Positions 35,441-59,330 of a stretch of 64,000 bases of DNA are shown in pieces. Made by a program: the position numbers and the translations under genes. Position 1 is the first letter of the stretch, and each line of letters starts with the position of its first letter. This stretch comes from Ginglymostoma cirratum (taxonomy: Eukaryota), in assembly GCA_024137785.1 (NCBI GenBank), contig JAHRHZ010000084.1:6907573-6971572 (forward strand), given 5' to 3'. The notes under the pieces were generated by a model, which saw only the letters and a program-made list of their open reading frames with translations, searched no databases and had not been told where the DNA came from.

Positions 35441-35553
35441 ATTCATTTTTCGTCTTCTAAATTCTGTCCCAATGAGGATCATTGGCACCAAACCTGCCAA
35501 TCCAGCCACCTTACATGCAGCTAACCGGAAGTAACATAAGTAAACACCATTCC
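35441..35553 (-). pseudogene. IgSF receptor gene B: transmembrane exon
   Basis: GNGVYLCYFRLAACKVAGLAGLVPMILIGTEFRRRKMN|gtaaga; 113 nt, phase 1 to 0; acceptor AG apparently mutated to TG. Confidence 0.65.
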
Positions 35554-36706
35554 CAGCAAAATTAAAACAAACTTCAGTAATGGTATATTGGAACAAAAAA
35601 ATGGTCTAATAGTAATTATAATAGTTTATTGCTTCCTGAAGAAATTTCAGTAACCCGTTGTTAATGAAACAATAGGGTCGCTCGAATATAAATGTCTTTG
35701 ATGTAGTATTTGAAGTAAGTTCTTCACAGATTTAAATATATGAATTCAACAATGAAGTTTATTTCAAGGCTGTCGGAATATTTTATCAGAATTGAAATTG
35801 GAAAACGATCAAATTCCCATAATCATAAGTGTATGTTCCTTTTAGGACCTTTCTTAACTTTTAACATAACCTTCTTGGAATTTGGTGCTCATCTTTTACT
35901 TGAATTTCTACATCGCCCATCCATCAGTTATGTTTATTAGGAAACAAAACTATACTCTTTAAATTAAATGTGTATATGGATGTAAAACTGTATTTAAATA
36001 GTAAATAATATCAACGGATTAAGGTTCAATTAGTTTCCTTTTTATCTGTCCTGTCGAAGCACCATTAATAATTTAACTTTTTGAACACGATTTACCGTAG
36101 TAATGCTGCCCGCGCAGCTTGAATGACATATGTGAGATAGAGGCTAATTCAAGTCCCTGTGCATGAAGGTGTGGTGAACGTCTGCAAGGGAATTTGATTA
36201 GGAATCGTTACAAATCGGTAAAAGTAGGGTGGGCGTGTACAGGCCTTTTGACCGTATTGTTCAACGCTCAGATGTAAACTGTCAAGATTATAAACGGCAG
36301 TTGAAGTAAAAACGTGACAACACGGGCAAACACTAGGACTGAGCAAAACTGCTTAAACATAGAAAACAAATAAATCGAACAGTCTTAATTATGAACCTAT
36401 GGATCCAAATGATGGATGAGAGAACACAAATTCTTGCCAATGATGATTACATATCAAATAAAAGAAATTGTAGACAATGTATGTTAACTGATTGTATTTG
36501 CTTCGTTACTGATATAAAATGAATATGAAACACACTACATTCTTCAATTTTATATATTTACATGAAAATATAATGTTTTCTTTGATACTTCACGTAACAT
36601 GTCCATGCACGAATGTCATGATTGTTGAAATGTACCAACGGTGAGTTACGTCACTTCTTAACTACATCAGTGAACTTTCCTCCGTTATATTCTGTCAACA
36701 GCGTAC

Positions 36707-37013
36707 CTTGGTTCGCTTCAGAAATAGTGCGGGTTGCAACGTCTGGAGTCCTGAGCCTGAGACGCCGAGCAGGTATAATTGGCTTCGTTTGAACAACTTG
36801 TCGCACAGATACAGAGCTGGAATCTTGGTAGAGTCTCTCGGCGTTCTGCACTTACAAGGTTGTCCATTCCTCCTCCAGTTTTGACGCCATTTTTAAAGCA
36901 AGTTGGCGTAATATTCTTCGGATAAAATCCGGCTGCCTCACATGCAAGCGTCAAAGACGCGGGTGAATTTCCTACAGGTGACCCAGAGAAGGCAATCAGC
37001 AGTGTTGGCTTCA
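36707..37013 (-). pseudogene. IgSF receptor gene B: C1-set domain exon (frameshifted)
   Basis: tttgcag| VKPTLLI...LTLACEAAGFYPKNITPTCFKNG (C1 motif CxAxGFYP, W to C) ... QNAERLYQDSSSV ... ANYTC ... |gtacgc; several frameshifts. Confidence 0.85.
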
Positions 37014-37158
37014 CTGCAAAATGGAAACTAAACTGAGTCGAGTCATCACGTGCAGTCATGAGACAATACGAGATTAGACATGATGGTGCAGTTTGTGACA
37101 ATCGTGTCACTCAAAGCAGTGATCATCTGTCCTTCTGGTTTGAGGCGGATGATGGAGT

Positions 37159-39700
37159 AATAGAGTCATACAGTACAGAAACATACCCTTCGGTCCAACC
37201 GGTCCATGCCAAATATAATCCCAAACTATACTGGGCCCACCTGCCTGCTCTTGGCCCATATCACTCCAAACCTTTCCTATTCATGTAATTTTCCTAATGT
37301 CTTTTAACCGATGTAATTGTGCCCACATCCACAACTTTGTCAAGAATTTCAATCCACATGCGAACCACCATCTGTTACTAAAACTGGCCCTCATATCTTT
37401 TCTTAAACATCTCGCCGCTCAACCTTAAAAATTGCCCCCTCCCCCGTCTTGAAATCCTCCATTTTACAGAAAAGACACCTAAAATTAATCCTATCTACAT
37501 CCGTTTCATAAACTTCTGTGAAGTCACTTCTCAACCTCCTATGCTCCAGTGAAAGAAAGTTCCAGCCTCTCTAGCCTTTCTGTATAATCCAAACCTTCCA
37601 TACCCAGCAACCTCCTGGTAAATCTCTTCTGAACTCTCTACAGCTTAATAATACTCTTCATATAACTGGGCAACAAGGACTGCAAATATTTCATTCAGGT
37701 GTTTCATGGAAACAAACACCTGTTCAATATTACCTGAGCTATCCAAGACCTTGGTTACTTGGCAGACAGAGTGAAAGAATTGTTTCAGTGCATAAAGAGG
37801 CCAGTCAGACTACCTTGTTTTAGTCGGCTCTCCGAATGAATACTTGCCTTACGTGTTCTGTTTATGGCTTACGCAATTAGCTTTGAAGTTCACAATGCTT
37901 CTGAACTTTGAATTATCCATTACGAAAAAAAAGACTTCTTCTGTAGAACAGGATCCCTGCCATAAACATATGTGAGGATGAGCAGTCGTCCCTGAAGAAT
38001 TCTGCTACTTACGTTCCTCCAACCCTAAAAACACCGTTGATCACTTTCCCACTTTCTATCACCTCCAGCTTTTTCCAGCAATCATATTCTTCCATCCATT
38101 TCACATGAAATTTAGAAACATTTTTGAATATTTCATGGTTTTATGTCTTCATTGATAAATCAAGGAAAATTGAATCCAGTACAGCTGCTAAGTCAGGAGT
38201 CTTATTTCACGACCACATGCCCTCGAACCTCCTAAGGTTCAGTCTGTTTATAGCTCTACCCTTTACCGCCGAACATAATTTTTTTTTTTAATTTACTCCA
38301 CTCGTTTCACCTCCTGAATCTTGCTTACTCCTGGAATGTTATTTGTGTCCTCTCCAGGGGAGTTTCTGAAAAAAATAAGTTTTGTCAGACTGGAAAATCG
38401 AAAATGTGACTCTTTTATTCAACAAAGGAAGCAAGGAAACAGAAAACACTAAACTCCAGGACAGTCGACTTCTGTAATCGATAAAAAAAACAGACTATTT
38501 TGTTCAAGAAGACATAGGGAATTTGTGAAAATCGAAATATTAACAAGAAAAGTCAGCTTGGTTTTGAGAAAGGAAATAATGTTTAATTGACTTTTCGGAG
38601 TGGTATGAGGAAATAAATAACGATGGAGTTTTAGAGTGCCTCAATCATAACTCATCTCACCCTTCTCTTCTCTGGAGAAAATAGTCTAACTTATCTAATC
38701 TACCTTCACAATTAACGTGAAACTATTTTCATGGCTTCCGCAGTCTTGTGCATCGTCTTCAATGCCATTACATGCCTTCCTAAAATGCGGCGTCCAGTAC
38801 TTAATGCAAGGCTCAGCATTTATGTTGGCTGTCCATTCTGTTCCTGCCAAAAAATGTATGGCAAAGTTATTGGACATTGAATTTCATGTTCCAATTGTCT
38901 GATAATTCCGTCTTCTTGTCTTTATTCTATTAATGGCTTACACTATCCGCTTTGAAGTTCACAATGTTTTCAAACATTGAATTATCCACTGCTGAAGATA
39001 GACCTGCCCTGTAGAACAGGATCCATGCCATTAATATATATTAGGGTGAGCAGTGATCCCTGAAGAATTCCGCTATGTAAATTCCTCCAAGCCGAACAAC
39101 GCCATTGATTACTTTTTTTCCACTTCTTATCACATCCAAAATTTGAATCCTTGTTGCTACGGACCATCTTATTCCCTTATCTGTAAATTGCTTCACTCTT
39201 TTGTCGTATATGATTATGTCAAATGCCTTTTGGAGGTCTATTATTACCACGTCAGCAGCACTTATTTCCTCAGCACTTCATGTTAACTGTCGCAAGATGC
39301 TCCAAAATATTCGTTTTGCATAACTTTGCTTCAGGAAATCCTTGATCACTTTCTTTAATGACACCATTGTTTCCAAATGACCATTGGTTTTATATTCAGT
39401 TGTTGCTTCGAGACTTCTCCACACGAGGGAAGTTTAACTAACTGTCCTCCAGTTCCTTACATTTTTCAACAATGATATAACACTTGGTATCTTTTAGACC
39501 TTCGATAATATCACTTAATCTAAGGGAGTTTGGTGTAATGACACTGCCTCCACATCGTCATTCTTACTTCCCTCCGCAATGTTGGATATCTCACCCATAA
39601 AGGAGCCACAGCCTATCCAGTACCCTGCTGTTTCTCATCTTTATACCGTCGTTGTATTGAGATGTCGTCTTCTTTCACTATGGCCTTGAAATCATCTTCA
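37159..39700 (-). mobile_element. CR1 LINE fragments in the V-C1 intron of gene B
   Basis: CR1 3' tail at ~37159; RT remnants IDLQKAFD (ORF 39041-39250) and SGILQGSLL (ORF 38982-39167). Confidence 0.7.
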
Positions 39701-40012
39701 AAGTTTTAGGCAACAGAGTCTCCACCGGGATTTACTCGTTGAGCTCCATGAGGTAATATCGTTGCATGCGTCAAATAAGCTGTGAAACCCCATGTCCTGA
39801 ATTGGCGAAATATAAGAAGAGGGTCCTGTACGTCACATGCTTGGAATCTAATTCAAACATTTGCCACCAGAGTTCAAATATATGCTTTAGAACGCAGGCC
39901 ACAATATTCTACATCTAATATTAAATGCCAAAATACCATTTCTGTCACTACAAGTTACTGTTGATTTTCAATATGTTTATGACAATTTGACTATTTTTTC
40001 TTTCCTACTTAC

Positions 40013-40326
40013 CATAAACAATTAACTGTGATCCGCTTCAATTTTCTCGAAATATCCCTTGACATATTACTGTGCTGTAATAGATTCCAGAATCTTGGAA
40101 AGTTGTGATCAGCAATTTAAATTTACTCATTCATTCGCTATTTCTCCTAAACTATTTCCCAGCCTTACCGCCGTCTGCTAGGCATTCAGAGTCTCCCTGT
40201 TTCCACCAGTGCACTCTTATGCAAGGAGGGTTCTGCAAGCTGGAGAATGTGCAAAAGAATCTTCTACTTTTACCACGACGTACAGTCATTTGCTTGGGCG
40301 TCTGAATTACTCCGAATGAAATGTGC
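40013..40326 (-). pseudogene. IgSF receptor gene B: germline-joined VJ domain exon
   Basis: One frame reads ..GVIQTPKQMTVRRGKSRRFFCTFSSLQNPPCIRVHWWKQGDSECL...FQDSGIYYSTV...EN*SGSQLIVY|gtaagt: first Cys, core Trp, DSGxYY(C to S) and a J-like G strand; three in-frame stops. Confidence 0.85.
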
Positions 40327-40707
40327 CTGCAGCTGTCAGAAATGTAAGGACATGGAAACTCATTGTATGAGATCAAAGTGGGGAAGCAAGAAAATCAAAG
40401 CCATTCCCTATAATGTAGTGTGTGGTATGGTGGGAGGGAAGGGTGCTGGTGGTGATATAGGAGGCTTCTGGCCAAATGTTAGGGCGAAGATTGTAGATCA
40501 CGAAGCTTAAAAGATCCATTATAGTCTTGGAACGTGTTTAGGCAGATAGGAAGAATGGGAGCCTCCCATGGTCAGCCACGTTTGATCTGGAGTGGAGCCC
40601 TTCAATTTACAAAACCCAGCAATTTGCTACAGTCTACCACAGGAGCCCTAGTTGTGGGCAGAGCGGACGAGAGAAATGCATTACTACAAAAGCATTTTAT
40701 ATATTTC

Positions 40708-40770
40708 CTGCGGCAATAATTAAAGACATACATGTGTAACCAGACAGAGTAGCCACAAGCGTGCTAACAT
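40708..40770 (-). pseudogene. IgSF receptor gene B: leader exon
   Basis: MLARLWLLCLVTHVCL*; start context cctcagaATG resembles cctcggaATG of the + strand paralog; 3' end uncertain (gtatgt at 40731 or mutated donor at 40707). Confidence 0.6.
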
Positions 40771-41029
40771 TCTGAGGAACTGGTTCAGTCGATCACTCTC
40801 CGCAGTTACTGCGTGTTTGCAACTGCTTAAAATGGTTGGCGGTCAGTTTTGCTCAAAGTGGTCGGCAACGACTTTTTGTGCCCGATAACAGCTGATCGAT
40901 AGAAAACATTTTGTTATGCATTGAAATTTCTCCATGGTGTAAAACGGTTGGATTTTAATGTTATCAGAGAGAGAAAGAGAGAGATAGCTGAATGCTTCGT
41001 ACCTAGCCACTGTAATAGAAAGACAAAGG

Positions 41030-42120
41030 TAGCAAAGTATGTTGTGAAGAGCTTTTAAGGAGTTTACAAACAAATGATTGCAGATATACTGTGTGAGTGA
41101 ACAAAGCCTGACAGGCAAACGATCGCTGATTGAAATTGGCAGGTGCAATGTTGAAAGCATGAAAGAGAAGGGATCAGCGCTGTGAACTTAACTTCCAAGG
41201 CTACGCATCCTATTGAAAGGACAGGCGGATGGGTAGCGTGATAACAAGACCATATATTGTGTCGGAACGCATAAGATCCGTGTGGATAGAGTTCAGGAAC
41301 AGCCAAGGCAAAAACAAAAAAAAAATCCTAACAGTCGGTATGTAGATGTCTCCTAGTAATAATTGTGGATGTGGGGCAAGGAATAAATCAGACGATAGAA
41401 AAGAATGCAAGAAAGGCATTATTACAATAATCACGGGAGACCTCCATCTGCTGGCAGACTGGGAATATTAGGTTGGCACCGGATCCCAGGAAAAGTGATT
41501 CATGAAATATCTATGAGATGGTATTTAGGAGCAGCTGGTGGTGGAACCTACCGCAGCGCTAGGGCATTGTTAGATTTCAGTGGGATTCGGAGACAGAGGT
41601 GCTCACTCATAATTCCACAGATGGTAGCTTCGCACAGCTGGTTCAGATGGTTCTGTGTTTGGTGACAAGTAACGACGTAGAATTGGTTAGGGTGCATAAG
41701 GTGGCGGAACCCTGAGGGGACAGTAACAACAATATTATAGAATTCACCCCGCAGTTTGACAGGGAGAAACTGAAATCAGATATAACAGTGTTACAATTGA
41801 GCAAAGTTAATTACAAAGCCATGAGGGAGGAGCTTACTGAGCTGATTGGAAGGGATCTTAGCAGAGAAGACGGTGGAGCAACAATAACAGGAGCCTTTGG
41901 GGTAATTTAGAAGACACAGCAGAAATTAATTCCAAAGAAGAAGAAACATAGTAATGAGAAGAAGAGGCAACCGTAGCCAATAAAGTAAATCAGTGACAGT
42001 GAAAAAGCAAAAGAATAAACAAACAAGGTGATGAAGTTGAACGGGAAGCCAAATGATTAGAAAGCCTTTTTTTAAAAAGAGGACAACTGTAAGTACAATA
42101 AAGGGAGAGAACATGAAACA
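41030..42120 (+). mobile_element. CR1 endonuclease-region fragment
   Basis: gatccgtgtggatagagttcaggaacagccaaggc and GD/SD remnants typical of the CR1 APE domain. Confidence 0.6.
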
Positions 42121-43111
42121 TGAGGGCAAGGGTGCTAAATGCCTTCTTAACCACACTATCTATATGTGATTCAAGTTTCGAAGAATTATGTACCTGAACA
42201 CCAATGTCGCTAAACTCAGTGCTTTTACCATTCTGAACATATATGATCCTGTGAAAGTTCAAGCCATGACTTGAATTTGAATTTGAATTTGAATTTGAAG
42301 TCAAAATCTGTTAGTTAATTCTCTTGGGACACCTGATCAAATTCCACCACGGCAGCTGGTGAATTGTAAATGTAATTAAAAATCTTCATTTGAAATTGGA
42401 GCCCCCAGTAATGGAAACAGGAAAATTATCGTCACTTACTGTAAAAAAAAGGGTATTTGGTTCAATAGTGTCCGATATTGAAAGAAATCAGCTCCAGAGC
42501 AACGGCAACACTAGAAACTAATGCCCTTTAAGGAAGTAAAACCTTCCTAAAAACAAAGCGATAAGAATGATTCTTAACTGTGTTTTAAAACGTCTGAATA
42601 ACCTCCGTTGGGGCGGCCCATGATCAGATGTGACACAATAAGTCTGCCTAATGGCATAAATATGCCAGATATTTTGAGCCACAAAAAACAGATTAATCTG
42701 TCTTGTGCGGAATTAGACTGAGACCATACACTGGCACAATGCTAGCTTTGAGAAAGAGATAAATTCCAGGTAACGGGGTCTATTTTTAGCAAGGAACTTT
42801 ACAATAATATACAAGGAGTTCTGTACAAACAACAGCTGCAGATGCCTGTCAGAGACTGCCCAATTAGAGATATCTGGGAATAGACAGGCCAAGATTGAAT
42901 GTTAACAACAAGTAGAAAAAGTGTACTATCCCACACGAATAAAGACTCTTTACATAATCGAGTATTGAGAAATTCAGAAATGCAATCTGCACCCAAAGTT
43001 AAGAAATTTGGCAAAATTCCTTTACACAAAGGACCGTAGATAGTGGAGAGGAGTCAATCTCCCGTTAATGAGGCAGATTGAGCGACAAATGGGGAAAACC
43101 GATAACATTGA

Positions 43112-44855
43112 GAGAGCAAGATGTAGAGCTGGATGAACACAGCAGGCCAAGCAGCATCATAGGAGCAGGAAAGCTGACTTTTCGGGCCGAGACCCTTCAT
43201 CAGAAATGGGGGAGGAGAAGGGGTTTCTGAAATAAATAGGGAGAGAGGGGGAGGCGGATGGAAGATGGATAGAGGAGAAGGTAGATGGAGAGGAGACAGA
43301 CCAGTCAAAGATGTGGGGATGGACACAGTAAAGGTGAGTGTAGATGGGGAGGTAGGGAGGAGATAGGTCAGTCCAGGGAGGACGGACAGGTCAAGGGGGT
43401 GGGATGAGGTTAGTAGGTAGGAGATGGGGGTGGGGCTTGAGCTGGGAGGAGGGCATAGGTGGGAGGAAGGACAGGTTAGGGAAGCGGGGACGAGCTGGGC
43501 TGGTTTTGGGATGCAGTAGGGGGAGGGGAGAATTTGAAGCTTGTGAAGTCCATATTGGTACCATTGGGCTGCAGGGTTTCCAAGCGGAATATGAGTTGCT
43601 GTTCCTGCAACCTTCGGGTAGCATCGTTGTGGCACTGCAGGAGGCCCAGGATGGACATGTGGTCTGTGGAATGGGAGGGGGAGTTGAAATGGTTCGCGAC
43701 TGGGAGGTGCAGTTGTTTAGTGCGAACCGAGCGTAGGTGTTCGGCATAGCGGTCCCCAAGCCTCCGCTTGGTTTCCACAATGTAGAGAAGGCCACAACGA
43801 GAACAGCGGATGCAGTATACCCCATTAGGAGATGTGCAGGTGAACATCTTCTTGATGTGGAAAGTCTTCTTGAGGTCTGGGATGGTGGTGAGGGGGAGGG
43901 GTAGGGGAAGGTGTAGCACTTCCTGCAGTTGCAGGAAAAAGTGCCGGGTGTGGTGGGGCTGGAGGGGAGTGTGGAGCGGACAAGGGAGTCACGGAGAGGG
44001 TGATCCCTCTGGAAGGCAGATAAGGGTGGGGAGGGACAAATGTCTTTGGTGGTGGCGTCGGATTGCAGATGGCGGAAGTGTCGGAGGATGATGCGTTGGA
44101 TCCAGGAGGTTGGTGGGGTGGTACGTGAGGACGAGGGGGATTCTGTTTTGGTTTTTGTTGAGGGGGTGTGAGGGATAAGTTGTGGGAAATGCGGGAGGCA
44201 CGGTCGAGGGTGCTAAACAACTGCACCTCCCAGTCGCGAACCATTTCAACTCTCCCTCCCATTCTACAGGACACATGTCCATCTTGGGCCTCCTGCAGTG
44301 CCGCAATGATGCCACCCGAAGGTTGCAGGAACAGCATCTCATATTCCGTTTGGAAACCCTGCAGCCCAATGGTATCAATGTGGACTTCACAAGCTTCAAA
44401 ATCTCCTCTCCCCGTACCGCATCCCAAAACCAGCCTAGCTCGTCCCCGCCTCCCAAACCTGTCCTTCCTCCCATCTATCCCCTCCTCCCACCTCAATCCC
44501 CACCCTCATCTCCTACCTACTAACCTCATCCCGCCCCCTTGACCTGTCCGTCCTCCCTAGACTGACCTATCTACTCCCTGCCTCCCCACCTAACTCACTT
44601 TTACTGTCTCCATCCCTGCCTCTTTGACCGGTCTGTCTCCTCTCCACCTATCTTCTCCTCTATCCATCCTCTATCCGCTTCGCCCCTCTCCCTATTTATT
44701 TCAGAACCATCTTCCCCTCCCTCATTTCTGAAGAAGGGTCTAGGCCCCAAACGTCAGCTTTCCTGCTCCTATAATGCAGCTTGGCCTGCTGTATTCATCC
44801 AGCTCTACACCTTGTTATCTCAAATTCTCCAGCACTTGCAGTTCCTACTATCTCT
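43112..44855. mobile_element. Penelope-like element with inverted structure: - strand copy (~43112-44211) fused to + strand copy (~44212-44855)
   Basis: ORF 43476-43919 GVYCIRCSRCGLLYIVETKRRLGDRYAEHL...LETLQPNGTN (GIY-YIG endonuclease); the + arm is the reverse complement of ~43112-43720; hammerhead-like motifs at 43176-43203 (-) and 44728-44755 (+). Confidence 0.9.
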
Positions 44856-45396
44856 GAAACAACCTTTAGAGAGGACCAGCTCTACTTCGACAAAATAAAG
44901 AATGGCAGCTTTTCAAACTAACTAAGCAAAACTAAATAACGATGATGGAGCCAGCTGAAATGAATTCATAAATCCAATGATCAAGGGAGGAGGGACAGAC
45001 AAATGATAAGGTAAAAGAGAAACGAGAATATATTAGCAAAACCGTAGTGGTTCAGACAATCTTATTGAGCGGTGAACACTATTGAGTTTCTGTCTTATTG
45101 ACTTAATTTGAATGAATGCCGTCTTATTAAGTGAAAAAGATACTGTTGAAACATTTAGTGTAGGGGCAGTAAATTTGAACTTAGAAATAATTTCCTGTTT
45201 AAAACACACTTACACATAGCACGTGAATAGAAGGAATCATAATTGCAGATGCAAGATAGAGGGGCAGCGTTCCGTTCCAAGATCGGGTGGGACGCAAGCT
45301 GCTCACAGCTCGTTAAGCAAAGAATTCTAACATTAGGTGTGACCATATTTCTTTATATATGATTAAACTTATATCAGAACAGATATTATGTATTTT

Positions 45397-49439: not shown

Positions 49440-49599
49440 CTGTAAAAGAGAACTTCATGCTTTGCGAGTGAATGGTGGCATCTCTAACTCAAGTTCATAA
49501 TCGGTGTCATAAACAGCTCTCAGCCAGCCAGGGATGGAACAATCGTTTAAAATAAATACAATTTTAAGTCGTTTACTGAATACTCTTTCACTGATGACC

Positions 49600-50990
49600 A
49601 TGTGATACACATAAAACGGATGCACTCACTGAATAGTAATGAATTTGGGAAGTTTAACAAAGCTTCAGAATTGGGAATAAATGGCAGGATATTTGGAGAG
49701 ATAGACGAAGTGAAAAACTTGGGAGTGCATGTCCACAGACGTTTGAAGATGGCACAACAATTAATAACGGTAGTAAAGAATGATTATAGGACGCTTTCCT
49801 TCCGAGGATAAGATCTGAAATATGACAGCAAGGATGTAATTCCGGGCTGTGTGAAACGCTGATTTGGCTACAGATACATATATTGTATACTTCTGGGCAC
49901 TGCATTGCAGGAAGTTTGTTATTGTTTTGAAGACGGTACAGAAGGAATTTGAAGGGTTCCAATGGATTGGAAACATTAGCTCTGGAAAAAGAGTGAAGTG
50001 AGTGTCATTTCTGCGAGTACTCTTGAGTTGCGCTTTGGCTAAATTGAAATTCATAAGATTAGAGGGACATTGACAGAACAGGATAAGCATATTTCCCCTA
50101 ATGGGGAAATAATCATCGATCTAAAGTAATTTCTTTTCGAAGGAATACATGGAAAATGAGAAAGAAAATTCGCCCAGAATTGATGGATGTTTGGAATGCG
50201 CTGTCTGGTTAGGCAACTGAGCAAGGGATATTTAAACTGTTTAACACTAAGGCCCTAAACTTTTTTTTTATTTAAAGGCAAGTGTAAGGAGCTGTGTGAC
50301 GGATGTGACTCGATTAGTCTACTTCTGGTCTTTGAGCAAACAAGAAAAAACTTTATTTTTACAACACGGTTAAAATACAAACAAACAAGAAGAATTGATA
50401 TAACGTTTGACGTATGGAAATACTTAACAAATTAATTTATTATACAGGAAATAAACATAAACTGTTCCAATGTAGCAATATCTCATAAACACACCCTTTG
50501 CCAAAGCAAATTAACCAAGACAGATTTTCCACATTTACTATCTCCTCCAGTCCAGGTAAAAGCAACACCTAAAGAACAATTTAGCAGTCGACACAGGATA
50601 CAAGCTCTTTTTGCCGCAGAAGAGAGAGATGTATCTATCAGCCTCAGTAGCCAGCTCCAAACCCCAAATGTAAGGAAAACTAAATCCCTGATTTTGTGAT
50701 TAAAACAAAATGCTCAGGGAAGTCAAGGTTGTTTACGTACTACTTCTGAAGCAGATAATCCGACACAAATGTGGTAACACTGCTCTGCAAGAGAAACAGC
50801 AAAGACCAAATCTCACTTTATGGCTAGTGCCGTCACAAAACGTTCATGGATCTGCACTGCAAGCGCTGTAATTTTTAAGGAAACAAGCAGGTGTTGGAAG
50901 ATAAACCTTGACTGGGCAATTAGGTTGAATTCTGGCGCGCACTGACACACTGAATGATTCCCTGGTACCATGGATTTTCTATGATTTTTA
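49600..50990 (+). mobile_element. Degenerate CR1 3' part interrupted by a solo LTR
   Basis: KNLGVHVHRRLKMAQQL matches RDLEVHFHRSLKIATQV (ORF 60424-60753); ttttctatgatt tail at ~50975. Confidence 0.7.
50238..50837 (-). mobile_element. Solo LTR related to the Gmr1-like LTRs at 13101 and 18562
   Basis: Reverse complement starts tgtgacggcact and contains aatttgctttggcaaagggtgtgtttatgagat...acattggaacagt, matching ~13429-13481. Confidence 0.75.
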
Positions 50991-51654
50991 TCGTGCGCAG
51001 CACGATAGAATACTTTAGGAATACTAACATGTTTCCAAATTGTTGGCGGGAAATAATTGGTACCGAATTGGGGTATTTCACAAAGTCTCTAAAGGGAGAA
51101 ATGTGCCGAGGCCAATGTGGTAACACCGCTCTGCAATTTCCGTGAAGGTTGTTAACTAAGGTGATACGCTGAAAACATATAGCATAATGTGATGCAAACA
51201 TATTCAATGGTACACTCGTATTTGTATCTGCTTAGAACACAATTTGTCAAGTTGCACTGACCATTTACGTTTTCGATCAATTTACATGCTTATCTGTTCT
51301 CTTACATGCAGAAAGAAATAACTTTTGGAGTTCTTCCTTTGAGCTAAATTAATTCAGAAAATACTAGACAAATTAAAATTTGAAGTTGTCAGCGTTGTTC
51401 AAATCTCATTATCGAATTAAAATGAATCTCAATTGCTCAATAGGTATTTTCTGTACCTTCATCACAACCTGAAAGCAGTTCGAATGGACACCTGTACCTC
51501 TTTCTGAATCCCCAATTTACAACGTCTTCCTGCACCGTTACTCTATCAGACGAAAGCACAATGAAGAAGACAGAGGTTAAAATCCCTCTCATTCAAATAT
51601 GTTGTGTAAATAATTGCAACCCTGCTCTTATTGCAGCTCGGTTTGATTTCTGGA

Positions 51655-53317
51655 TCAGCTCAGCCGAACTTGTCCTCACCCTCAACAACTCATTTAATTC
51701 CTCCCGCTTCCGACAGACAAACAGGGTGGCCATGGGTACCCGTATGGGCCCAAGCTATGCCTGCCTCTTTGTAGGTTACGTGGAACAATCCCGCCCGTAC
51801 CTACAACGGCCCGAAACCCCACCTCTTACTCCGTTACATTGATTACTGTATCGGCGCCGCTTCGTGCTCCCACAAGGAGCTCGAACAGTTCATCCACTTC
51901 ATCAACATCTTCCACCCCAACCTTAAGTTCACCTGGGACATCTCTAACACTTCTCTCTCCAACCCGGACCTCTCTGTCTCCATCTCGGGTAACCACCTAG
52001 AAATCGATGTGCATTTCAAGCCCAAAGACTCCCACAAGCTACCGAGAATACACCTCCTCCCACCCACCTTCCTGCAAAAATGCCATCCCCTATTCCCAAT
52101 TCCTTCGCCTCCGCCGCATCTGCTCCAAGGATGAGACATTCCACTCCTGTACATCTCAGATATCCTCATTCTTCAAGGACCGCAACTTCCCCCAGCAGTG
52201 GTCAAGAACGCCCTCCACCGCGTATCGTGCATTTCCCGCAACTCATCCCTCACACCACGTCCCCGCAATAAAAACCAAAAAAAGAATCCCCCTCGTCCTC
52301 ACGTACCACCCCACCAACCTCCGGATCCAACGCATCTTCCTCCGACACTTCCGCCATCTGCAATCCGACCCCACCACCAAAGACATTTTTCCCTCCCCAC
52401 CCTTGTCTGCTTTCCGGAGCGACCACTCTCTCCGTGACTCCCTTGTCCGCTCCATACTCCCCTCCAGCCCCACCACACCCGGCACTTTTCCCTGCAAGAG
52501 CAGGAAGTGCTACACCTGCTCCCACACCTCCTCTCTCACCCCAATCCCAGGCCCCAAGAAGACTTTCCACATCAAGCAGATGTTCACCTGCACATGTGCC
52601 AATGTGGTATACTGCATCCGCTGTTCCCGTTGTGACCTCCTCTACATCGGGAAACCAAGCGGAGGCTTGGGGACCGCTTTGCAGAACACCTGCGCTCAGT
52701 TCCCAACAAACAATTGCACCTCCCAGTCACGAACCATTTCAACTCCCCCTCCCATTCCTCAGACGACATGTCCATCCTGGGCCTCCTGCAGTGCCACGAT
52801 GATGCCACCCGAAGGCTGCAGTAACAGCAAATCATATTCAGCCTGGGAACCCTGCAGCCCAATGGTATCAATGTGGATTTCACAAGCTTCAAAATCTCCC
52901 CTCCCCCAACCGCATCCCAAAACCAGACCAGCTCATCTCCGCCTCCCTAACCTGTCCTTCCTCTCACCTATCCCCTCCTCCCACCTCAAGCCCCATCCCC
53001 ATCTCCTATCTACTAACCACATCCCACCCCCTTGACCTGTCCGTCCTCCCTGGACTGACCTATCTCCTCCCTACCTCCCCACATACACTCACCTTTACTG
53101 GCTCCATCCCCGCCTCTTTGACTTGTCTGTCTCCTCTCCACCTGTCCTCTCCTCTATCCATCTTCTATTCGCCTCCCCCTCTCTCCCTATTTATTTCGGA
53201 GCCTTCTTCCCCTCCCCCATTTCTGAAGACGTGTCGAGGCCCGAAACATCAAACTTTCCTGCTCCGATGATGCTGCTTGGCCTGCTGTGTTCATCCAGCT
53301 CCACACCTTGCTATCTC
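51655..53317 (+). mobile_element. Penelope-like element, 5'-truncated (RT C-half + GIY-YIG + terminus)
   Basis: VAMGTRMGPSYACLFVGYVEQ, RYIDY, CKNAIPYSQFLRLRRICS and NVVYCIRCSRCDLLYIG; frameshifted. Confidence 0.92.
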
Positions 53318-53500
53318 AGTCAACTCGAAATGGTGATTTGTGATTTCTGGCAGTTTGGATTTTCAAAATCTTGCTATTTTATGGTCGTACCAACAGTATC
53401 CTCTCCACGGTTTCGTGCTAACCATTTCTGAACATAGAACATCAATTTCCACCTTAGGACAATCACGTCCTGCTCTACTACGCCAGGCTTCTCTCTCAAA
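53318..53500 (-). pseudogene. Possible 5' half of a V-domain exon of gene A; possible 3' half at ~51500-51650 beyond the PLE
   Basis: GVVEQDV../KVEIDVLCSEMVSTKPWRGYCWY (V-like Cys-Trp spacing); other side RVAIIYTTYLNERDFNLCLLHCAF**SNGAGRR. Confidence 0.3.
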
Positions 53501-54507
53501 TCCTACATTGTCTTTAGGTGTCGAATTTGCTTCCTGAATTCAAGCAATGAGCATAAACGTGCTTTAATTCATAACTTGCAGACAGAAGTCATTGCCTTTG
53601 ACTTCTGCATCATGATTAACGCTATCATGATTAACGCTATAAAAAGTGTTTCGTACTCAAAATGTCGGCAAACTTTGTTTTTGAATTTTATCTGCACCAT
53701 TACCAAAACTCCACTTTAATCTATGCAGCATTGCCCTCTAACGTTATTGCTATGCTCCCACTCTGCAGTTTCCTCAGGTAACCTAACTGTTTGCTGCCAA
53801 ATTCCAAACTCTGAACAAGTCGCCTCACCCATCAATTCGGTGTTTGCCGACCACGTGTTCCCCATCAAATCAATGCCTCGATTTTAAATCCTCATTTTTG
53901 TTCCCTGATCTGTTCCCTGCTACCTTTATGAGCCCAGCTAATCACAAAACTATCAGAAAAAATCCAACACGTTTAATCCCGACCTTCTGAGTATCCGCAA
54001 ATTTGATGAGCCTCCATCACTCTTTGGCCCCCTTGCCTTTAGATGACAAGGTTCCAAACTCGACGCATTCCTCTGAAAACCTTTCTACTTCGCACCTTCA
54101 CGTTCTTCCTTTACGATACCCATTAGGAGCTATGTATTTGATGAAGTTTTCTTCTTTCATACTTTTCAGTGCCAAATATTGCATTATGATGTTTTAAAGA
54201 AGCTCCTTGCGAAGTTTTGCTTCATCGAATGCGCTGTATAAAGACAAACATACGTTGTTAATGGCACATTGGTAATTCAGGGAACATGTTTGACCTGCCG
54301 ATTTTTGTTGATGATGTTACACTTGACTTCGAGATCTGCTGGACAGCACAATAGACGCAATAAATCCATTTTTTTTGGCATGGAACGACAAACATAGAGT
54401 GCCAATCGACATTCCCACGTGTTTCCGTTGAAAGAAATAGTTGACGCTCTGACAGTGGCAAACCAAACGTGAGACCAATCAGCCATCAATTCGAGGTTTA
54501 CCTCGGA

Positions 54508-54568
54508 ATGTCTGTCGTTGCAATGGCGCTGTTAACGGTCTTGTTGCTGTCGTGTCCAATTTGCACAG
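54508..54568 (+). pseudogene. IgSF receptor gene C: leader exon
   Basis: ATG, MSVVAMALLTVLLLSCPICT, phase-1 donor ag|gtatct; CCAAT motifs at 54402 and 54475. Confidence 0.8.
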
Positions 54569-54777
54569 GTATCTTCTTATCCTTGTTCTCAGACATCTCA
54601 TTAAAAACTAGAGATCTTACCTCATTACTATATCATTTTAATTGAATGTAGTTCGTTCCTTTGTTATCTTATTGCTCTTCTTTATTTCCATGTACAATTG
54701 TGCCCTCAAGTATTTGTTTTTGCATAGAATACAATTAATTAATATGGAGTTTTAAACAAAAATACTAGTTTTGGCAG

Positions 54778-55083
54778 TTACTTCCACCAGCGTATCTCAA
54801 CCTCCCAAAGAGGCAAATATCTTAAGTGATACAGATATCATTCTCTTCTGTATCATCCCCCTTTCTCGTGACAACTTAGGAGTCGTTGGTGAAAATGGGG
54901 AGAGAATAAATATCTGTAAACAGGACCAGATAACAGGTAACGTTTTGGTCTCAAAAATAAGAGAGGTATTTCTTTTAGATGTGCGAAACGCAACGCTTCA
55001 TGACTCAAGGCGTTGTAATTGTGCAGTAAGCCTTCAGGACAAAGCTCGTCGGAATGAATCTGGAACCAATCTAACTGTCGACG
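54778..55083 (+). pseudogene. IgSF receptor gene C: germline-joined VJ domain exon
   Basis: ttggcag| VTSTSVSQPPKEANILSDTDIILFC...[other frame W*KWGENKYL*TGPDNR*RF]...DVRNATLHDSRRCNCAV...NESGTNLTVD; donor mutated (ggaagt). Confidence 0.85.
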
Positions 55084-55747
55084 GGAAGTGAAGGGGGAAC
55101 AGGAATATTCAGGACGTTTTGTTGTCAATGCTCTTTTATGCCATTTTTGAATGCAGACAACATATTGATGTTTACTGTATAATTCTGTAAACAACGCTTA
55201 AAAGCACCTGAAGTTTTCTTATCTGTGGTCTTTATAGCGGCGTCAATATCAACATGGGTATCGAATATATACCAAACTTATTATAATGTCAATAAATTTA
55301 GGCAACCAGGAATATAATAACGAACTGCAGGGAATCCTCAGCAAGGCACGTGGAGTCTGCACACAGTTATTATCTCAGGCCTACAACCTTGATAAATTGG
55401 ATGTCGATGTATTCTTTTCAAAATATAGCTTTAACTTTAGATATTCTTATACTAAGGTTCGCCACCGTCCCTCCATGTACTATATTCCTCAGCTCTTTGT
55501 GCCTGTCTCAGCAGCATATACAGTAGCTTCTAGATAACCAATGAGAAACTTCCCAATCTTCTAAATTTCTAAACTTTTCACTCACTTTTGTTTTTGCGAA
55601 CTGACCCATAGACATTGCAACTCACCTGGAAACACACCGATCCATTGTTATTTACAAGAACAGGTTAAATGAGCATACCGTTCCTCTCAAGTTTCTGATG
55701 CTGAACATCTGTCCAGTAACCTGATGTTCTTCATCTTCTGTTTGCAG

Positions 55748-56045
55748 TGTCTCCAGTTTCAATCACGATTTTTGCGAAACCACCTATGGACAATTCATAG
55801 AAGTTTCTAACTCTCCTATGTGAAATTAATGGATTTTACTCTCCTTTGGTATAAAAATGGCACGGTAATCACAACAAAGATAAACACGATTAATAAGCAG
55901 AACGGTAGTGGACTGTACGAAGACTCCAATTCTTTGTAAGAATCACAGTCTGAGGGGAATGACAACATTTGTGTCTGTTTGAAAACACATATCTCCCTCC
56001 AGATTTCCACCATTGCCATCCACAAAGTGATCAATCACCATTCAG
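55748..56045 (+). pseudogene. IgSF receptor gene C: C1-set domain exon
   Basis: tttgcag| VSPVSITIF...LTLLCEINGFYS /frameshift/ LWYKNG...QNGSGLYEDSNSL*...CVCLKTHISL; paralogous to 36707-37013; donor mutated (ttatgc). Confidence 0.85.
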
Positions 56046-56645
56046 TTATGCGACAAACAGGCCAAGAAATGAAGCCTGCAATTAGTAACACTACTTTGAA
56101 TTTATTCAAATGGTTAATCATGAAGGTAGTTACAAAGTAAATTCCTCAAAATAACACAGCCACACAAAACAAATTTAGAGAATCCTTCCACACAAAACAA
56201 GAATCATTGAAAGAAGATAACAAATAGGATAGGAATAGGCTATATGCCCCAGCAAACATGTTTGGCCAACAATAAGGCAGTTGACGTCAGTTCCATCACC
56301 ATATACCTGATGCCAGTATCTACAATTCTGGTAGAGGTATTTTTGGAGTCTCATTGCCAACTAGAGTAGAGAATATCAGATTCACAACATTTGAATACAG
56401 CTATTCCTCCTCATCTCAGCATTAAACGGCTTAACTCTTGAGTCATTATGATGCCTGCTCCTATATTGCCGAGACAGAGGATTATATCACTGCGATATCC
56501 TTTAGGTAACATGAAAGGATTCATTCGATATTGTGAAACTATTGAAAACACACTTGGTTTAACCAAGAAACAGTTCTTTCGACCTTTTTCCAAACAGCTA
56601 CCTTTAATGTACAGATTAATATCTATATTCACGTTATCCTTGCAG

Positions 56646-56760
56646 ATTGTGTTGGTATGCCCATTTATTATTTATGCTTCAGGTACACGATGGGGGATTG
56701 GTGTTGCTACTGCTCCTGACCATCATTAAGCTACACTGTTTTCAATTCCAAAAGGGAAAG
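56646..56760 (+). pseudogene. IgSF receptor gene C: transmembrane exon
   Basis: ccttgcag| ... /frameshift/ GGLVLLLLLTIIKLHCFQFQKGK |gtaagg. Confidence 0.75.
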
Positions 56761-57685
56761 GTAAGGCATAATGTAACAATTTTATTTTAATACAAAACTA
56801 CCTATTGCAGAAAGAGAAAATCTGAATGTCCACCACTCATACAGGGAAGAAGATTGGATTTAATGTTTTCTATTTCAAACAGGACAACCAGTATTGTTCC
56901 AAAAAGGAATAAATACTTTACTCAAAATATCGCAGCAGTCACAAAATCATATCAAAATTGTATTTGAGTTTACCCATCTGCATTGAAATGTTTGTGTTGC
57001 AGCAAGCACTAAATGTATGCGTCCTCACACGCTATCAGTTTACAAGTACCTTTTCGTAGAACATGTTTTTTCCTGTGACGCCTAGTGGGATTCAAGCCTA
57101 AGACAACTGCAGATCATTGCAGCTCAGGACAGGGACTGTGATACAAACACTGTCAAGGAAATCTGAAACGGATTAATCCGGTTCTACTTTATGTCTTCTT
57201 TGGAATGCAAGTAAACTATTGAAGGATTCGACATGAAAACATTGCCTGCTATTTATATGAATTTCTATGTTGAAACAGCAATATTAAAATGTGTCACAGC
57301 GGTATGAAGAGCAAAGCCCTTTTTCATACAGCTCTGCAATGTTTAAAATTTGTATGTGAAATGATTGCTACAATGAATAACGGTATCTATTTTTAGATAA
57401 GATTTGATTTAATTTATTATTATTGTCATATTTACCTAGGTACAATGAAAAGATTTGTTTTGCGTGCAGTACAGGCAGACCAGAACATACCAAGGTCAGA
57501 GGGTGATTCACAGAACGAGGAACACAAAAAATATTTGTCACGTGGAAAAATAGCTAACATCAGTAAAAAGGGAATGAAGTTCATAGAATCCCTACAGTAT
57601 GGGAACAGCCCCTTCGGCCCAACAACTCCACAATGGCCCTCAGAGCATCCCATCCAGACACATCCCTATAACCCAGCTAAGCTAC

Positions 57686-58640
57686 TCCTCCGACATTTCC
57701 GCCATCTGCAATCCGACCCCACCACCAAGGGTCATTTTTCCCTCCCCACACTTATCTGCTTTCCGGAGGGACCACTCCCTCCGTGACTCCCTTGTCCGCT
57801 CCACACTCCCCTCCAGCCCCACCACTCCCGGCACTTTTCCCTGCAACCGCAGGAAGTTCTGCATCTGCCCCCACACCTCCTCCCTCACCCCAATCCCAGG
57901 CCCCAAGAAGACTTCCACATCAGCCAGATGTTCACTTGCACATCTGCCAATGTGGTATACTGCATCCGCTGTACCGGTTGTGGCCTCCTCTACATCGGCG
58001 AAACCAAGCGGAGGCTTGGGGACCGCTTTGCAGAACACCTGCGCTCAGTTCGCAACAAACGACTGCACCTCCCATTCCTCAGACGACATGTCCATCCTGG
58101 GCCTCCAGCAATGCCACAGTGATGCCACCCGAAGGCTGCAGTAACAGCAAATCATATTCAGCCTGGGAACCCTGCAGCCCAATGGTATCAATGTGGATTT
58201 CACAAGCTTCAAAATGTCCCCTCCCCCAACCGCATTCCAAAACCAGACCAGCTCATCTCCGCCTCCCTAACCTGTCCTTCCTCTCACCTATCCCCTCCTC
58301 CCACCTCAAGCCCCACCCCCATCTCCTATCTGCTAGCCTCATCCCGCCCCCTTGACCTGTCCGTCCTCCCTGGACTGACCTATCTCCTCCCTACACCACC
58401 CCCCCCACCTACACTCACCTTTACTGGCTCCATCCCCGCCTCTTCGACTTGTCTGTCTCCTCTCCACCTATCCTCTCCTCTATCCATCTTCTATCCGCCT
58501 CCCCCTCTCTCCCTATTTATTTCAGAACCATCTTCCCCTCCCCCATTTCTGATGAAGGGTCTAGGCTCGAAACGTCAAGTTTTCCTGTTCCTATGATGCT
58601 GATTGGCCTGCTGTGTTCATCCAGCTCCACACCTTGTTAT
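57686..58640 (+). mobile_element. Penelope-like element, 5'-truncated, 9-bp TSD CTAAGCTAC
   Basis: VVYCIRCTGCGLLYIGETKRRLGDRFAEHL; TSD at 57677-57685 and 58641-58649. Confidence 0.92.
58549..58576 (+). ncRNA. Minimal hammerhead ribozyme motif (PLE type)
   Basis: CTGATGA-agggtctaggctc-GAAACGTC, all core positions intact. Confidence 0.65.
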
Positions 58641-59197
58641 CTAAGCTACACGACAGGCAATTTAGCATGGCCAATCCACCTCGTCTGAACATCGTTGGAC
58701 GATGGGAGGAAACTGGAACAACCGAAGAAACCCACGCGGAGACAGGGAGAACGTACAAACTCCACACAGACTGTTGCCCGAGGGTGATATCGAACCTGAG
58801 TCCCCGGTGCTGTGAGGCAGCAGTACTAACCACTGAGCCACCAAAGCTGATTCAGCAAAAACAAAATTAGTCACTTCCGTTGTAGGTCACGTTCAGCATC
58901 ACACCCAGTCTTCCCCGTTGTTAAAAGATGAATGGAGAAAAGAACAGCGCCAATTTGATTGAAATCTAAATGGCTAGCCATGCTGAACAGCTTTTTGTCT
59001 TTGAATTTCGGAACTAAGCATAAGTAATACATGTTCTAGGACGTTTGGAAATGTTAATACATTTCTAACTTTTTTTTTATTTTGTAACTGTGCTGTAACA
59101 TGTTAATTTATATGGTTAAATATTGATTACAGTGACCACTAGAATTGCCTGCTTTCATTTCACAAGTCCTTATAACTATTCAGTTTTGTGTTTTATC

Positions 59198-59330
59198 ACC
59201 AACTATTCTGCTCAAAGATTCAACAAATCTAAAACGATGATGGAAAATGAAATAAATATACAAGATCTATTTGCCAGACCCGGTTAGGAAATAAAGCATG
59301 AAATGGTTACTATGCTGCTGTAAACTGTAC
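59198..59330 (+). pseudogene. Probable terminal cytoplasmic exon of gene C with two decayed ITIM-like motifs
   Basis: TNYSAQRFNKSK...EIKHEMVT then, after a 1-nt shift, YAAVN; one in-frame stop; acceptor not identified. Confidence 0.4.

What the first reader, a model, noticed from the sequence alone, without database searches (positions are those of the whole stretch)
35441..59330. Hidden cluster of non-rearranging VJ-C1-TM immune receptor (pseudo)genes
Seen: two paralogous genes with the same exon plan, leader / V with germline-joined J-like strand (SGSQLIVY, SGTNLTVD) / single C1-set domain (CEAAGFYP, CEINGFY) / TM. Gene B is on - (40770-35441) and gene C on + (54508-56760). They share WWKxG, QNxxxLYxDS and the cctc(a/g)gaATG start context. 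Established: C1-set domains are largely confined to antigen receptors, MHC, tapasin and SIRP-like proteins, and non-rearranging VJ(-C1) receptors (NKp30-, NITR-, SIRP-like) are discussed as relatives of the pre-RAG antigen-receptor ancestor. Inference: this is part of a birth-and-death multigene family in a cartilaginous fish. The ORF track catches only scraps of it and an annotator would probably miss it.
Basis: partly seen in the sequence, partly recalled or inferred. Interest (0 to 1): 0.8.

Follow-up and report, generated by a model that had tools for sequence, protein, structure and literature searches.

The report
Two dead shark V-C1 receptor genes
The window holds two badly decayed pseudogenes of a shark family of antibody-like (one variable plus one constant domain) membrane receptors that databases already label "SIRP-alpha-like"; they are real relics of gene birth and death, not working or previously unknown kinds of genes.

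Summary
Both loci have the leader / V with J-like strand / single C1 / TM exon plan at the stated coordinates.

Profiles built from a chondrichthyan V-C1-TM-tyrosine-tail receptor family hit exactly these four Ig exons in the 64-kb window and nothing else. NCBI names the family's members SIRP-alpha-like, CD276 homolog, tapasin-related-like or class II beta-like.

Both genes are dead:
- **psiB** (minus strand, 40770-35441) has three in-frame stops and YYC>YYS in V, and three frame switches plus W>C in C1.
- **psiC** (plus strand, 54508-56760) looks open in V only because two frameshifts compensate. The ancestral frame carries three stops. The V donor reads GG. C1 has two stops and a 14-bp deletion.

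Contigs of a related species (about 93% identical) share psiC's V frameshifts, have lost the start codon, and still carry the 14 bp. So psiC died before the two species split and has kept decaying.

psiB and psiC belong to two old sublineages. No inhibitory-tail exons were found.

The scan has already found intact members of this family on other pieces of this genome. Verdict: ordinary pseudogene members of a known but poorly characterised family.

The parts
40732..40770 (-). psiB candidate leader exon (MLARLWLLCLVTH, donor GTATGT)
   Evidence: Read directly. The start context is CCTCAGAATG. The phase (0) does not fit the V exon, so either there is an indel or this is the wrong exon. It is not statistically supported (leader profile E > 1).
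40013..40332 (-). psiB V(J) exon. One frame, with three in-frame stops (TAG 40152-40154, TGA 40131-40133, TGA 40038-40040), second Cys lost (YYC>YYS), and a J-like strand SGSQLIVY.
   Evidence: tblastn E 4e-23, 46% to P0032. Family V profile scores 91.5 bits when read with X at the stops. Canonical donor G|GTAAGT in phase 1. The length of 320 nt is not a multiple of 3.
36707..37013 (-). psiB C1-set exon. The 307 nt need three frame switches (near 36852, 36789 and 36762), and the conserved Trp is replaced (TCFKNG).
   Evidence: Pfam C1-set E 4.4e-4, 21 bits, equal to the gathering score. Family C1 profile 75.7 bits. PDB best hits are UrIg2, IgNAR C and SIRP d2. Acceptor TTTGCAG and donor CAAG|GTACGC, both in phase 1.
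35441..35520 (-). psiB stalk/TM exon (AACKVAGLAGLVPMILIGTEFRRRKMN), open, acceptor TTAG, donor AAT|GTAAGA
   Evidence: Family TM profile E 0.005, the second-best hit in the whole window.
54508..54568 (+). psiC leader exon (MSVVAMALLTVLLLSCPICT), donor CAG|GTATCT in phase 1, which fits the V exon acceptor
   Evidence: In the related species the ATG reads ATT (54510 G>T).
54778..55083 (+). psiC V(J) exon. The ancestral frame is broken by two compensating frameshifts (near 54880 and 54972). The middle part, read in its ancestral frame, has stops at 54890 TGA, 54917 TAA and 54938 TAA. The expected donor GT reads GG (55084-55085). The J-like strand is SGTNLTVD.
   Evidence: 54875-54961 in frame +2 reads LRSRW*KWGENKYL*TGPDNR*RFGLKNK, 62% identical to P0032 residues 57-85. 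Family V profile 80.8 bits.
55748..56035 (+). psiC C1-set exon. Stop TAG at 55798-55800, 14-bp deletion after 55831 (frame +1 to +2), stop TAA at 55937-55939. The 3' end is uncertain.
   Evidence: tblastn about 1e-17, 54% to P0037/P0045. Family C1 profile 94.2 bits. The related species keeps the 14 nt, which restores CEINGFHPGDFTLLWYKNG.
56646..56760 (+). psiC candidate stalk/TM exon (..VHDGGLVLLLLLTIIKLHCFQFQKGK), donor AAG|GTAAGG
   Evidence: Family TM profile E 0.6 only. The incoming phase does not fit, so this is weak.
59302..59340 (+). Possible relic of psiC's first tyrosine-motif exon (NGYYAAVN, compare family xxYAALD / TYAAVD), with a stop two codons upstream
   Evidence: It is the best hit of the cyt1 profile in the window, but only at E about 1. 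It lies on the right strand, 2.5 kb downstream of the TM exon. By itself this is compatible with chance.

Best explanation
psiB and psiC are non-functional, long-dead copies of a chondrichthyan multigene family of germline-joined V(J)-C1-TM receptors. Intact members carry a four-tyrosine (ITIM/ITSM-like) tail and are auto-annotated as SIRP-alpha-like.

The two copies derive from two different old sublineages of the family that sit in the same cluster. Each was inactivated by stops, frameshifts and loss of canonical Ig residues, and now drifts neutrally among retroelement insertions. They make no receptor.

Shown:
- family membership of the four Ig exons;
- the lesions;
- that psiC's V frameshifts are shared with a related species.

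Inferred:
- the birth-and-death dynamics;
- that the intact relatives signal through SHP-type phosphatases, as SIRP-alpha does.
For: **Family membership**
- tblastn of 24 family proteins hits only the four exons: E 4e-23 (B V), 1.6e-13 (B C1), 5e-14 (C V), about 1e-17 (C C1).
- Exon peptides read with X at the breaks score 76-94 bits on the family V and C1 profiles. The best non-family domains score 41 bits or less (V) and 53 bits or less (C1); intact members score 137-175 bits.
- Trees place psiC as sister of Mustelus P0037 inside subgroup 2 (V clade 98/97; C1 92/81). psiB sits in subgroup 1.

**Pseudogene status**
- psiB has 3 stops, YYC>YYS, at least 3 frame switches and W>C.
- psiC has 5 stops, 3 frame breaks and a GG in place of the V donor GT.
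- End branches are 0.56-0.79 substitutions per site against a median of 0.13-0.18.

**Independent DNA**
- Contigs from four studies of a related species span psiC at about 93% identity.
- They have no indel inside the V exon, read ATT for the start codon, and still carry the 14 bp that is deleted here.
- Over the part of the difference list that was shown, exon divergence (about 8%) is no lower than intron divergence (about 6-7%).

**Nature of the family**
- Intact members are found in sharks, rays and a chimaera.
- The family profile's best solved relative is SIRP-alpha (E 1.2e-26), then UrIg2 (1.3e-24).
- An AlphaFold model of P0005 gives a confident V plus C1 that matches antibody light chains.
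Against: - No RNA run was available, so transcription is untested.
- No cytoplasmic exons were found for either copy, so the original tail type is unknown.
- The window's own reads were not available, so each single lesion rests on the assembly. Only psiC's V-exon frame structure and its 14-bp difference were cross-checked in another species.
- The list of substitutions from the related species was cut after 40 of 217. It is therefore unknown whether the stops are shared.
Confidence: 0.9

Rival explanations
1. The genes are functional, and the stops and frameshifts are assembly or consensus errors.
For: Splice sites are mostly canonical and in the conserved phases. psiC's V exon is formally open, 111 codons.
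Against: - There are at least 16 independent lesions across four exons, including base substitutions to stop codons, which indel-prone assemblies do not create.
- Canonical residues are lost: Cys and Trp in B, the V-domain Trp in C.
- The open V frame of C is the wrong frame in its middle third.
- A related species' short-read contigs show the same V-exon frame layout and a lost ATG.
- Terminal branches are very long.
Confidence: 0.03
2. They are decayed germline-joined IgL, TCR or IgNAR genes, or UrIg/UrIg2 copies, rather than members of a separate receptor family.
For: - The B C1 piece's best PDB hit by summed score is UrIg2 (4.6e-5), then IgNAR C (1e-4).
- Language-model neighbours are IgL constant regions.
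- The family model resembles light chains.
Against: - Against 1.84 billion proteins, the best single-domain matches of the B C1 piece are family members at 42-44% identity (E 5e-8). Where inspected, the other hits score through several C1 repeats.
- V exons are 42-52% identical to family V domains, but only E 0.04 or worse to any solved Ig/TCR V domain.
- One C1 is followed by a TM exon, unlike UrIg2, which has nine C domains in nurse shark and eleven in epaulette shark (PMC12227049).
- In the C1 tree the family separates from a UrIg2-like C1 and from turtle and lungfish SIRP C1 domains (93/88).
- No shark IgL/TCR/NCR3 sequences could be put in the trees, so this is a ranking rather than a full phylogeny.
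Confidence: 0.03
3. The relics are retained for a use other than coding: as gene-conversion donors for neighbouring intact family genes, or as transcribed regulatory RNAs.
For: - They lie in a cluster with intact members, according to unchecked earlier notes of this scan.
- psiC has survived as a recognisable locus in two species.
Against: - There is no DNA-level similarity between B and C, or to anything else in the window.
- Identity to the nearest intact relatives is only about 50% at protein level, too low for conversion.
- Exon divergence between species is not lower than intron divergence over the part listed.
- No RNA holder was found.
Confidence: 0.04

Closest known systems
Chondrichthyan V(J)-C1-TM-tyrosine-tail receptors, e.g. 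Mustelus asterias P0005 and P0037 ('tyrosine-protein phosphatase non-receptor type substrate 1-like'), with relatives in Heterodontus, Heptranchias, Scyliorhinus, Stegostoma, Mobula, Hemitrygon, Pristis and Callorhinchus
   Same: - Same exon plan.
- Same family signatures: WWKQGENEYL, RKRFG, FQDSGxYHC, GNGTGSxLxV, APTPL, CETAxFYPxxxTLxWYKNG, QNxEGLYEVSS, YTCxVSH.
- 47-54% identity.
- Tree placement inside the family.
   Different: psiB and psiC are broken by stops and frameshifts, and no tyrosine-motif exons were found. Intact members have open frames and mostly a four-tyrosine tail.
Mammalian SIRP-alpha/beta/gamma (PDB 2wng, 4i2x)
   Same: - V domain with a J-like strand followed by a C1-set domain, a TM and (in SIRP-alpha) four cytoplasmic tyrosines.
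- Best solved relative of the family profile, E 1.2e-26 over V plus C1.
- The B C1 piece hits SIRP d2 at about 1e-3.
   Different: - SIRPs have two C1 domains; this family has one.
- A turtle SIRP V domain is not recognised by the family V profile at 1e-3.
- Turtle and lungfish SIRP-type C1 domains fall outside the family.
- The margin over UrIg2 and Ig heavy chains is small.
- Orthology and CD47 binding are untested.
UrIg / UrIg2, non-rearranging shark antibody-like genes (PDB 9dmx; PMC12227049)
   Same: - Single-exon VJ domain, C1-type constant domains, germline-encoded.
- Second-best solved relative of the family profile (1.3e-24).
- Top PDB hit of the B C1 piece.
   Different: - UrIg2 has a VJ plus nine (nurse shark) or eleven (epaulette shark) C domains and forms disulfide-linked dimers with an Fc-like C2-C3 part.
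- The family here has one C1, then a TM and an inhibitory-type tail.
- A UrIg2-like C1 domain falls outside the family in the C1 tree.
Antibody light chains / TCR chains
   Same: Two-domain V plus C1 ectodomain. Foldseek's best matches of the P0005 model are light chains at E about 1e-15.
   Different: There are no separate V and J segments: V and the J-like strand are continuous in one exon. There is also a TM and a signalling tail, and sequence identity is only about 20%.
NKp30 (NCR3) and teleost NITRs
   Same: Non-rearranging V domains with a J-like strand (from my own knowledge and PMC12227049).
   Different: By my own knowledge, NKp30 has no C1 domain and the second domain of NITRs is not C1-set. 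Neither was compared by sequence here.

Membership tests
Chondrichthyan V(J)-C1-TM receptor family (P0005, P0028-P0046) | V domain matching the family V profile, with a J-like G strand in the same exon | tested here: met
   psiB 91.5 bits and psiC 80.8 bits, against 41 bits or less for non-family V domains. SGSQLIVY and SGTNLTVD are continuous with the V body.
Chondrichthyan V(J)-C1-TM receptor family (P0005, P0028-P0046) | A single C1-set domain matching the family C1 profile | tested here: met
   psiB 75.7 bits and psiC 94.2 bits, against 53 bits or less for non-family C1 domains. Pfam C1-set at the gathering score for the B piece. All atlas neighbours are C1-set.
Chondrichthyan V(J)-C1-TM receptor family (P0005, P0028-P0046) | Stalk/TM exon after the C1 exon | tested here: inconclusive
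   psiB E 0.005 (good). psiC E 0.6 with a phase mismatch.
Chondrichthyan V(J)-C1-TM receptor family (P0005, P0028-P0046) | Cytoplasmic tail with ITIM/ITSM-like tyrosine motifs (most members) | tested here: not met
   No cyt-profile hit below E about 1 on either strand. The only candidate is a weak YYAAV motif at 59302-59340. Short exons may escape detection, and psiC's downstream DNA ends 7 kb after its TM exon.
Chondrichthyan V(J)-C1-TM receptor family (P0005, P0028-P0046) | Open reading frame (a working member) | tested here: not met
   At least 8 stops and at least 6 frame breaks across the two loci.
SIRP family (SIRP-alpha/beta/gamma) | V-C1-C1 ectodomain | tested here: not met
   Family members and both relics have one C1, directly followed by the TM exon.
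SIRP family (SIRP-alpha/beta/gamma) | Sequence closer to SIRPs than to other V-C1 proteins | tested here: inconclusive
   SIRP-alpha is the best PDB hit of the family profile, but UrIg2 and Ig heavy chains follow closely. Turtle SIRP domains lie outside the family.
SIRP family (SIRP-alpha/beta/gamma) | CD47 binding, SHP-1/2 recruitment, conserved synteny | not testable with these tools
Rearranging antigen receptors (IgL, TCR, IgNAR), germline-joined copies | Nesting within Ig/TCR V and C clades | tested here: not met
   No Ig/TCR chain was identified among the 27 hits of the B C1 piece in 1.84 billion proteins; 20 of the 27 were inspected by sequence or by name. The V piece hits solved TCR/Ig V domains only at E 0.4 or worse. 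This is a ranking; no shark Ig/TCR sequences were in the trees.
UrIg / UrIg2 | VJ followed by several C1-type domains (nine in nurse shark UrIg2, eleven in epaulette shark) | tested here: not met
   A single C1 exon per locus. No further C1 exon in the window at E < 0.01. The domain numbers are from PMC12227049.

The most novel reading that the evidence does not exclude
The cluster that holds psiB and psiC may be part of an ancient family, distinct from SIRP, of non-rearranging VJ-C1 receptors lying in an MHC paralogous region. Its fast gene turnover (two old sublineages side by side, and pseudogenes shared between species) would then record pathogen-driven evolution of a relative of the pre-RAG antigen-receptor precursor. 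The relics themselves would add only the turnover record.
Probability: 0.12. Interest if true: 0.55.

Novelty: new member of a known kind. Interest (0 to 1): 0.27.

Why it matters
The two relics show that this shark V-C1 receptor family evolves by birth and death, and that members of two old sublineages lie interleaved in one cluster. They also show that a dead copy can stay recognisable across species. This gives a neutral yardstick for dating duplications and for measuring selection on the intact neighbours. For annotation, they warn that a long open V-exon frame (psiC) can arise from compensating frameshifts. The biological interest lies in the intact family, not in these copies. That family is annotated under at least five unrelated names and, as far as the held literature shows, has not been described.

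Tried and rejected
- **Pfam on single stop-free pieces.** Only the B C1 piece reached the C1-set threshold and the C pieces gave nothing. This was a sensitivity problem, solved with family profiles.
- **PDB search with the first half of B's V.** Nothing better than E 0.04.
- **Other family exons in the window.** I used regex for Ig motifs, tblastn and profiles. None were found, apart from a TM-like exon at 4590-4694.
- **Cytoplasmic ITIM exons.** I used profiles and a motif regex. The regex gave 8 matches, about what chance gives. Only one weak candidate turned up, at 59302-59340, and it came from the cyt1 profile (E about 1); its YYAAV motif lies outside the regex.
- **Pfam on ten large ORFs of the surrounding repeats.** No hit. 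I call them retroelement-like only from their repetition and, from my own knowledge, from a GIY-YIG-like motif.
- **Sequencing runs.** No run of the window's own organism and no RNA run, so expression and lesion-by-lesion confirmation were not possible.
- **Literature.** I found no paper on this family in the held library. The UrIg2 paper does not mention SIRP-like genes.
- **A search with a joined (spliced) model.** Exons were searched separately by reference. Pieces of one exon were joined only inside scripts, with X at every break, for profile scoring and trees.
Full report
**What is there**

The window is repeat-rich vertebrate DNA, about 40% GC, with one 400-N gap at 24708-25107 that I left untouched.

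On the minus strand, locus B has:
- a candidate leader (ATG at 40770);
- a V exon (40332-40013) ending ...SGSQLIVY G|GTAAGT;
- a C1 exon (37013-36707) opening at TTTGCAG|TG with VKPTLL...LACEAAGFYPKNIT;
- a TM exon (35520-35441).

On the plus strand, locus C has:
- a leader (54508-54568, donor CAG|GTATCT);
- a V exon (54778-55083) ending SGTNLTVD;
- a C1 exon starting at 55748 (..LLCEINGFY..WYKNG..QNGSGLYEDSN..ICVCLKTH);
- a candidate TM exon (56646-56760).

Splice sites are mostly canonical and in the phases usual for Ig-superfamily genes.

**Is it more than chance, and what family is it?**

Single stop-free pieces gave only borderline generic hits. The B C1 piece hit Pfam C1-set at E 4.4e-4, exactly at the gathering score. 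The C pieces hit nothing.

The B C1 piece matched only C1-type proteins among solved structures: UrIg2 at 4.6e-5, IgNAR C at 1e-4, and SIRP-gamma/alpha d2 at about 1e-3. In the protein atlas it matched only C1-set clusters.

A full HMMER pass over 1.84 billion representatives gave 27 hits. The best single-domain hits were 42-44% identical and about 5e-8. They turned out to be one family of 250-375-residue proteins built as leader, V with a GNGTGSxLxV J-like strand, one C1, a TM, and a tail with up to four tyrosine motifs.

A word search with P0005 (Mustelus asterias) found members in Heterodontus, Heptranchias, Scyliorhinus, Stegostoma, Mobula, Hemitrygon, Pristis and Callorhinchus. Their names are inconsistent: SIRP-alpha-like, SIRP-beta-1-like, CD276 homolog, tapasin-related-like, class II beta-like.

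Searched back against the window, 24 family proteins hit exactly four places and nothing else at E < 0.01:
- B V: 4e-23;
- B C1: 1.6e-13;
- C V: 5e-14;
- C C1: about 1e-17.

Profiles cut from the family alignment A1 gave the same four exons at E 1e-10 to 1e-12 among 4153 six-frame pieces.

**Both are pseudogenes**

psiB's V exon keeps one frame but has three in-frame stops (40152 TAG, 40131 TGA, 40038 TGA). It has also lost the second canonical cysteine (YYC to YYS). Its 307-nt C1 exon needs three frame switches to follow the family. The order is VKPT..GGGMDN in one frame, QNAERLYQDSSSVSV in the next, EANYTCSA back in the first, then LRLRTPDVATRTISEANQ in the second again. The conserved tryptophan reads Cys.

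psiC's V exon looks open for 111 codons, but that frame is not the ancestral one. The middle third matches the family only in frame +2, where it reads LRSRW*KWGENKYL*TGPDNR*RFGLKNK. This is 62% identical to P0032 residues 57-85 and carries three stops. Two compensating frameshifts therefore created a false open frame.

psiC has further damage. The expected V donor GT reads GG. The C1 exon has stops at 55798 and 55937, and a frame break after 55831.

Read with X at each break, exon by exon and inside scripts only, the four exons score 76-94 bits on the family profiles. Intact members score 137-175 bits. The best non-family domains score 41 bits or less (V) and 53 bits or less (C1).

**Independent DNA from a related species**

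No run of the window's own organism was served, and no RNA run was found. DNA contigs of a coded organism, from four studies, did span 54300-57300 in one piece each at about 93% identity: 217 substitutions and 58 gap letters.

- They show no indel inside the V exon, so both V frameshifts predate the split of the two species.
- The start codon reads ATT there.
- They carry 14 extra bases (GATTTCATCCGGGC) after 55831, which restore ...CEINGFHPGDFTLLWYKNG.... That matches P0037's CQTAGFYPGDLTLLWYKNG residue for residue in length.
- The window's frame break in C1 is therefore a later, lineage-specific 14-bp deletion between two GATTT repeats.

In the part of the difference list that was shown (54357-54899), the V exon differs at about 8% and the flanking non-coding DNA at 6-7%. 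There is no sign of constraint. The rest of the list was cut, so I cannot say whether the stops are shared.

**Relationships**

In maximum-likelihood trees of V and of C1 domains, psiC is sister to Mustelus P0037. It lies inside a subgroup that also holds Heterodontus and ray sequences (V clade 98/97; C1 92/81 and 94/85).

psiB lies in the other, unresolved subgroup, nearest to Heterodontus P0032/P0028 and Mustelus P0005.

The family as a whole is separated from turtle and lungfish SIRP-type C1 domains and from a UrIg2-like C1 (93/88).

The relics' end branches are four to six times the median. psiB and psiC are only 28-30% identical to each other, whereas intact members of the two subgroups are 50-56% identical. 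They share no DNA similarity.

So they are not recent duplicates of one another. They are dead representatives of two old sublineages lying 14 kb apart. Copies of a 1.1-kb repeat lie between and around them, at 43108-44823, 52211-53318 and 57686-58645.

**What the family is like**

The family profile's best solved relative is the SIRP-alpha ectodomain (E 1.2e-26 over V plus C1). UrIg2 (1.3e-24) and Ig heavy chains follow closely.

An AlphaFold model of P0005 built with alignment A1 has confident V and C1 domains and a TM helix. Its best Foldseek matches are antibody light chains at about 1e-15.

The tail motifs of intact members (xVHYAALD, LTYATL, TEYAELQ) resemble ITIM/ITSM. Inhibitory signalling through SH2 phosphatases is therefore the likely mode of action of the working members. 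That is inference from SIRP-alpha biology, not a result obtained here.

Filing the family as SIRP fails on domain number (one C1 rather than two), and the sequence evidence is inconclusive. I treat it as SIRP-like in design, with membership unproven.

I found no paper on the family in the held library. The UrIg2 paper (PMC12227049) covers a different, multi-C-domain gene.

**What was not found**

No tyrosine-motif exons were found for either relic. The only candidate is a weak YYAAV motif at 59302-59340. It is on psiC's strand, 2.5 kb past its TM exon, and is the top cyt1-profile hit, but only at E about 1.

The leader of psiB does not fit the phase of its V exon. psiC's TM exon is weak (E 0.6).

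**Context from the scan**

Earlier, unchecked notes report intact, transcribed family members on other pieces of this genome, and also just outside this window on both sides. My own results agree with their family assignment. I could not see those loci.

**Limits**

**Verdict**

These are ordinary pseudogene members of a known-but-uncharacterised family.

Noticed in passing
window 4590-4694 (+): An intact TM-type exon (DKDFNYLLISRWTVGTLAILISIIILTKLEFKTSAG) bounded by TGTAG| and |GTAAGA. It is the best hit of the family stalk/TM profile in the whole window (E 2.6e-5 to 2.2e-4) and resembles P0037's TM. There is no V or C1 exon upstream of it inside the window, so it is probably the tail of a third family member whose Ig exons lie before the window's start. 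An ISYAAIK motif at about 5921 (+) is unconvincing, as it has no donor site.
   Followed up: partly
window 43108-44823, 52211-53318, 57686-58645: Four copies of a repeat, full length about 1.1 kb (the inverted copy at 44213-44823 is about 0.6 kb), 85-90% identical to each other. Two of them form an inverted pair at 43.1-44.8 kb. Their long ORFs gave no Pfam hit at E < 0.01. From my own knowledge, a VYCIRCSRCGLLYIGETKRRLGDRF motif looks like the GIY-YIG nuclease of Penelope-like retroelements.
   Followed up: partly
window 54300-57300: DNA contigs of a coded related species, from four studies, cover the whole stretch at about 93% identity. Indels relative to the window are +14 nt after 55831, -15 at 56162 and +23 after 56286. 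This offers a way to date the decay of the cluster.
   Followed up: partly
window 37856-38067 and 38925-39138: Two 78%-identical repeat pieces lie inside psiB's V-C1 intron, next to reverse-transcriptase-like ORF fragments (..LQKAFDIIIYDKRV..). The intron has been inflated by retroelement insertions.
   Followed up: no
proteins P0028-P0046: One protein family carries at least five unrelated automatic names: SIRP-alpha-like, SIRP-beta-1-like, CD276 homolog, tapasin-related-like, and H-2 class II beta-like. P0031 (Scyliorhinus torazame) has two V domains in tandem before the C1.
   Followed up: no
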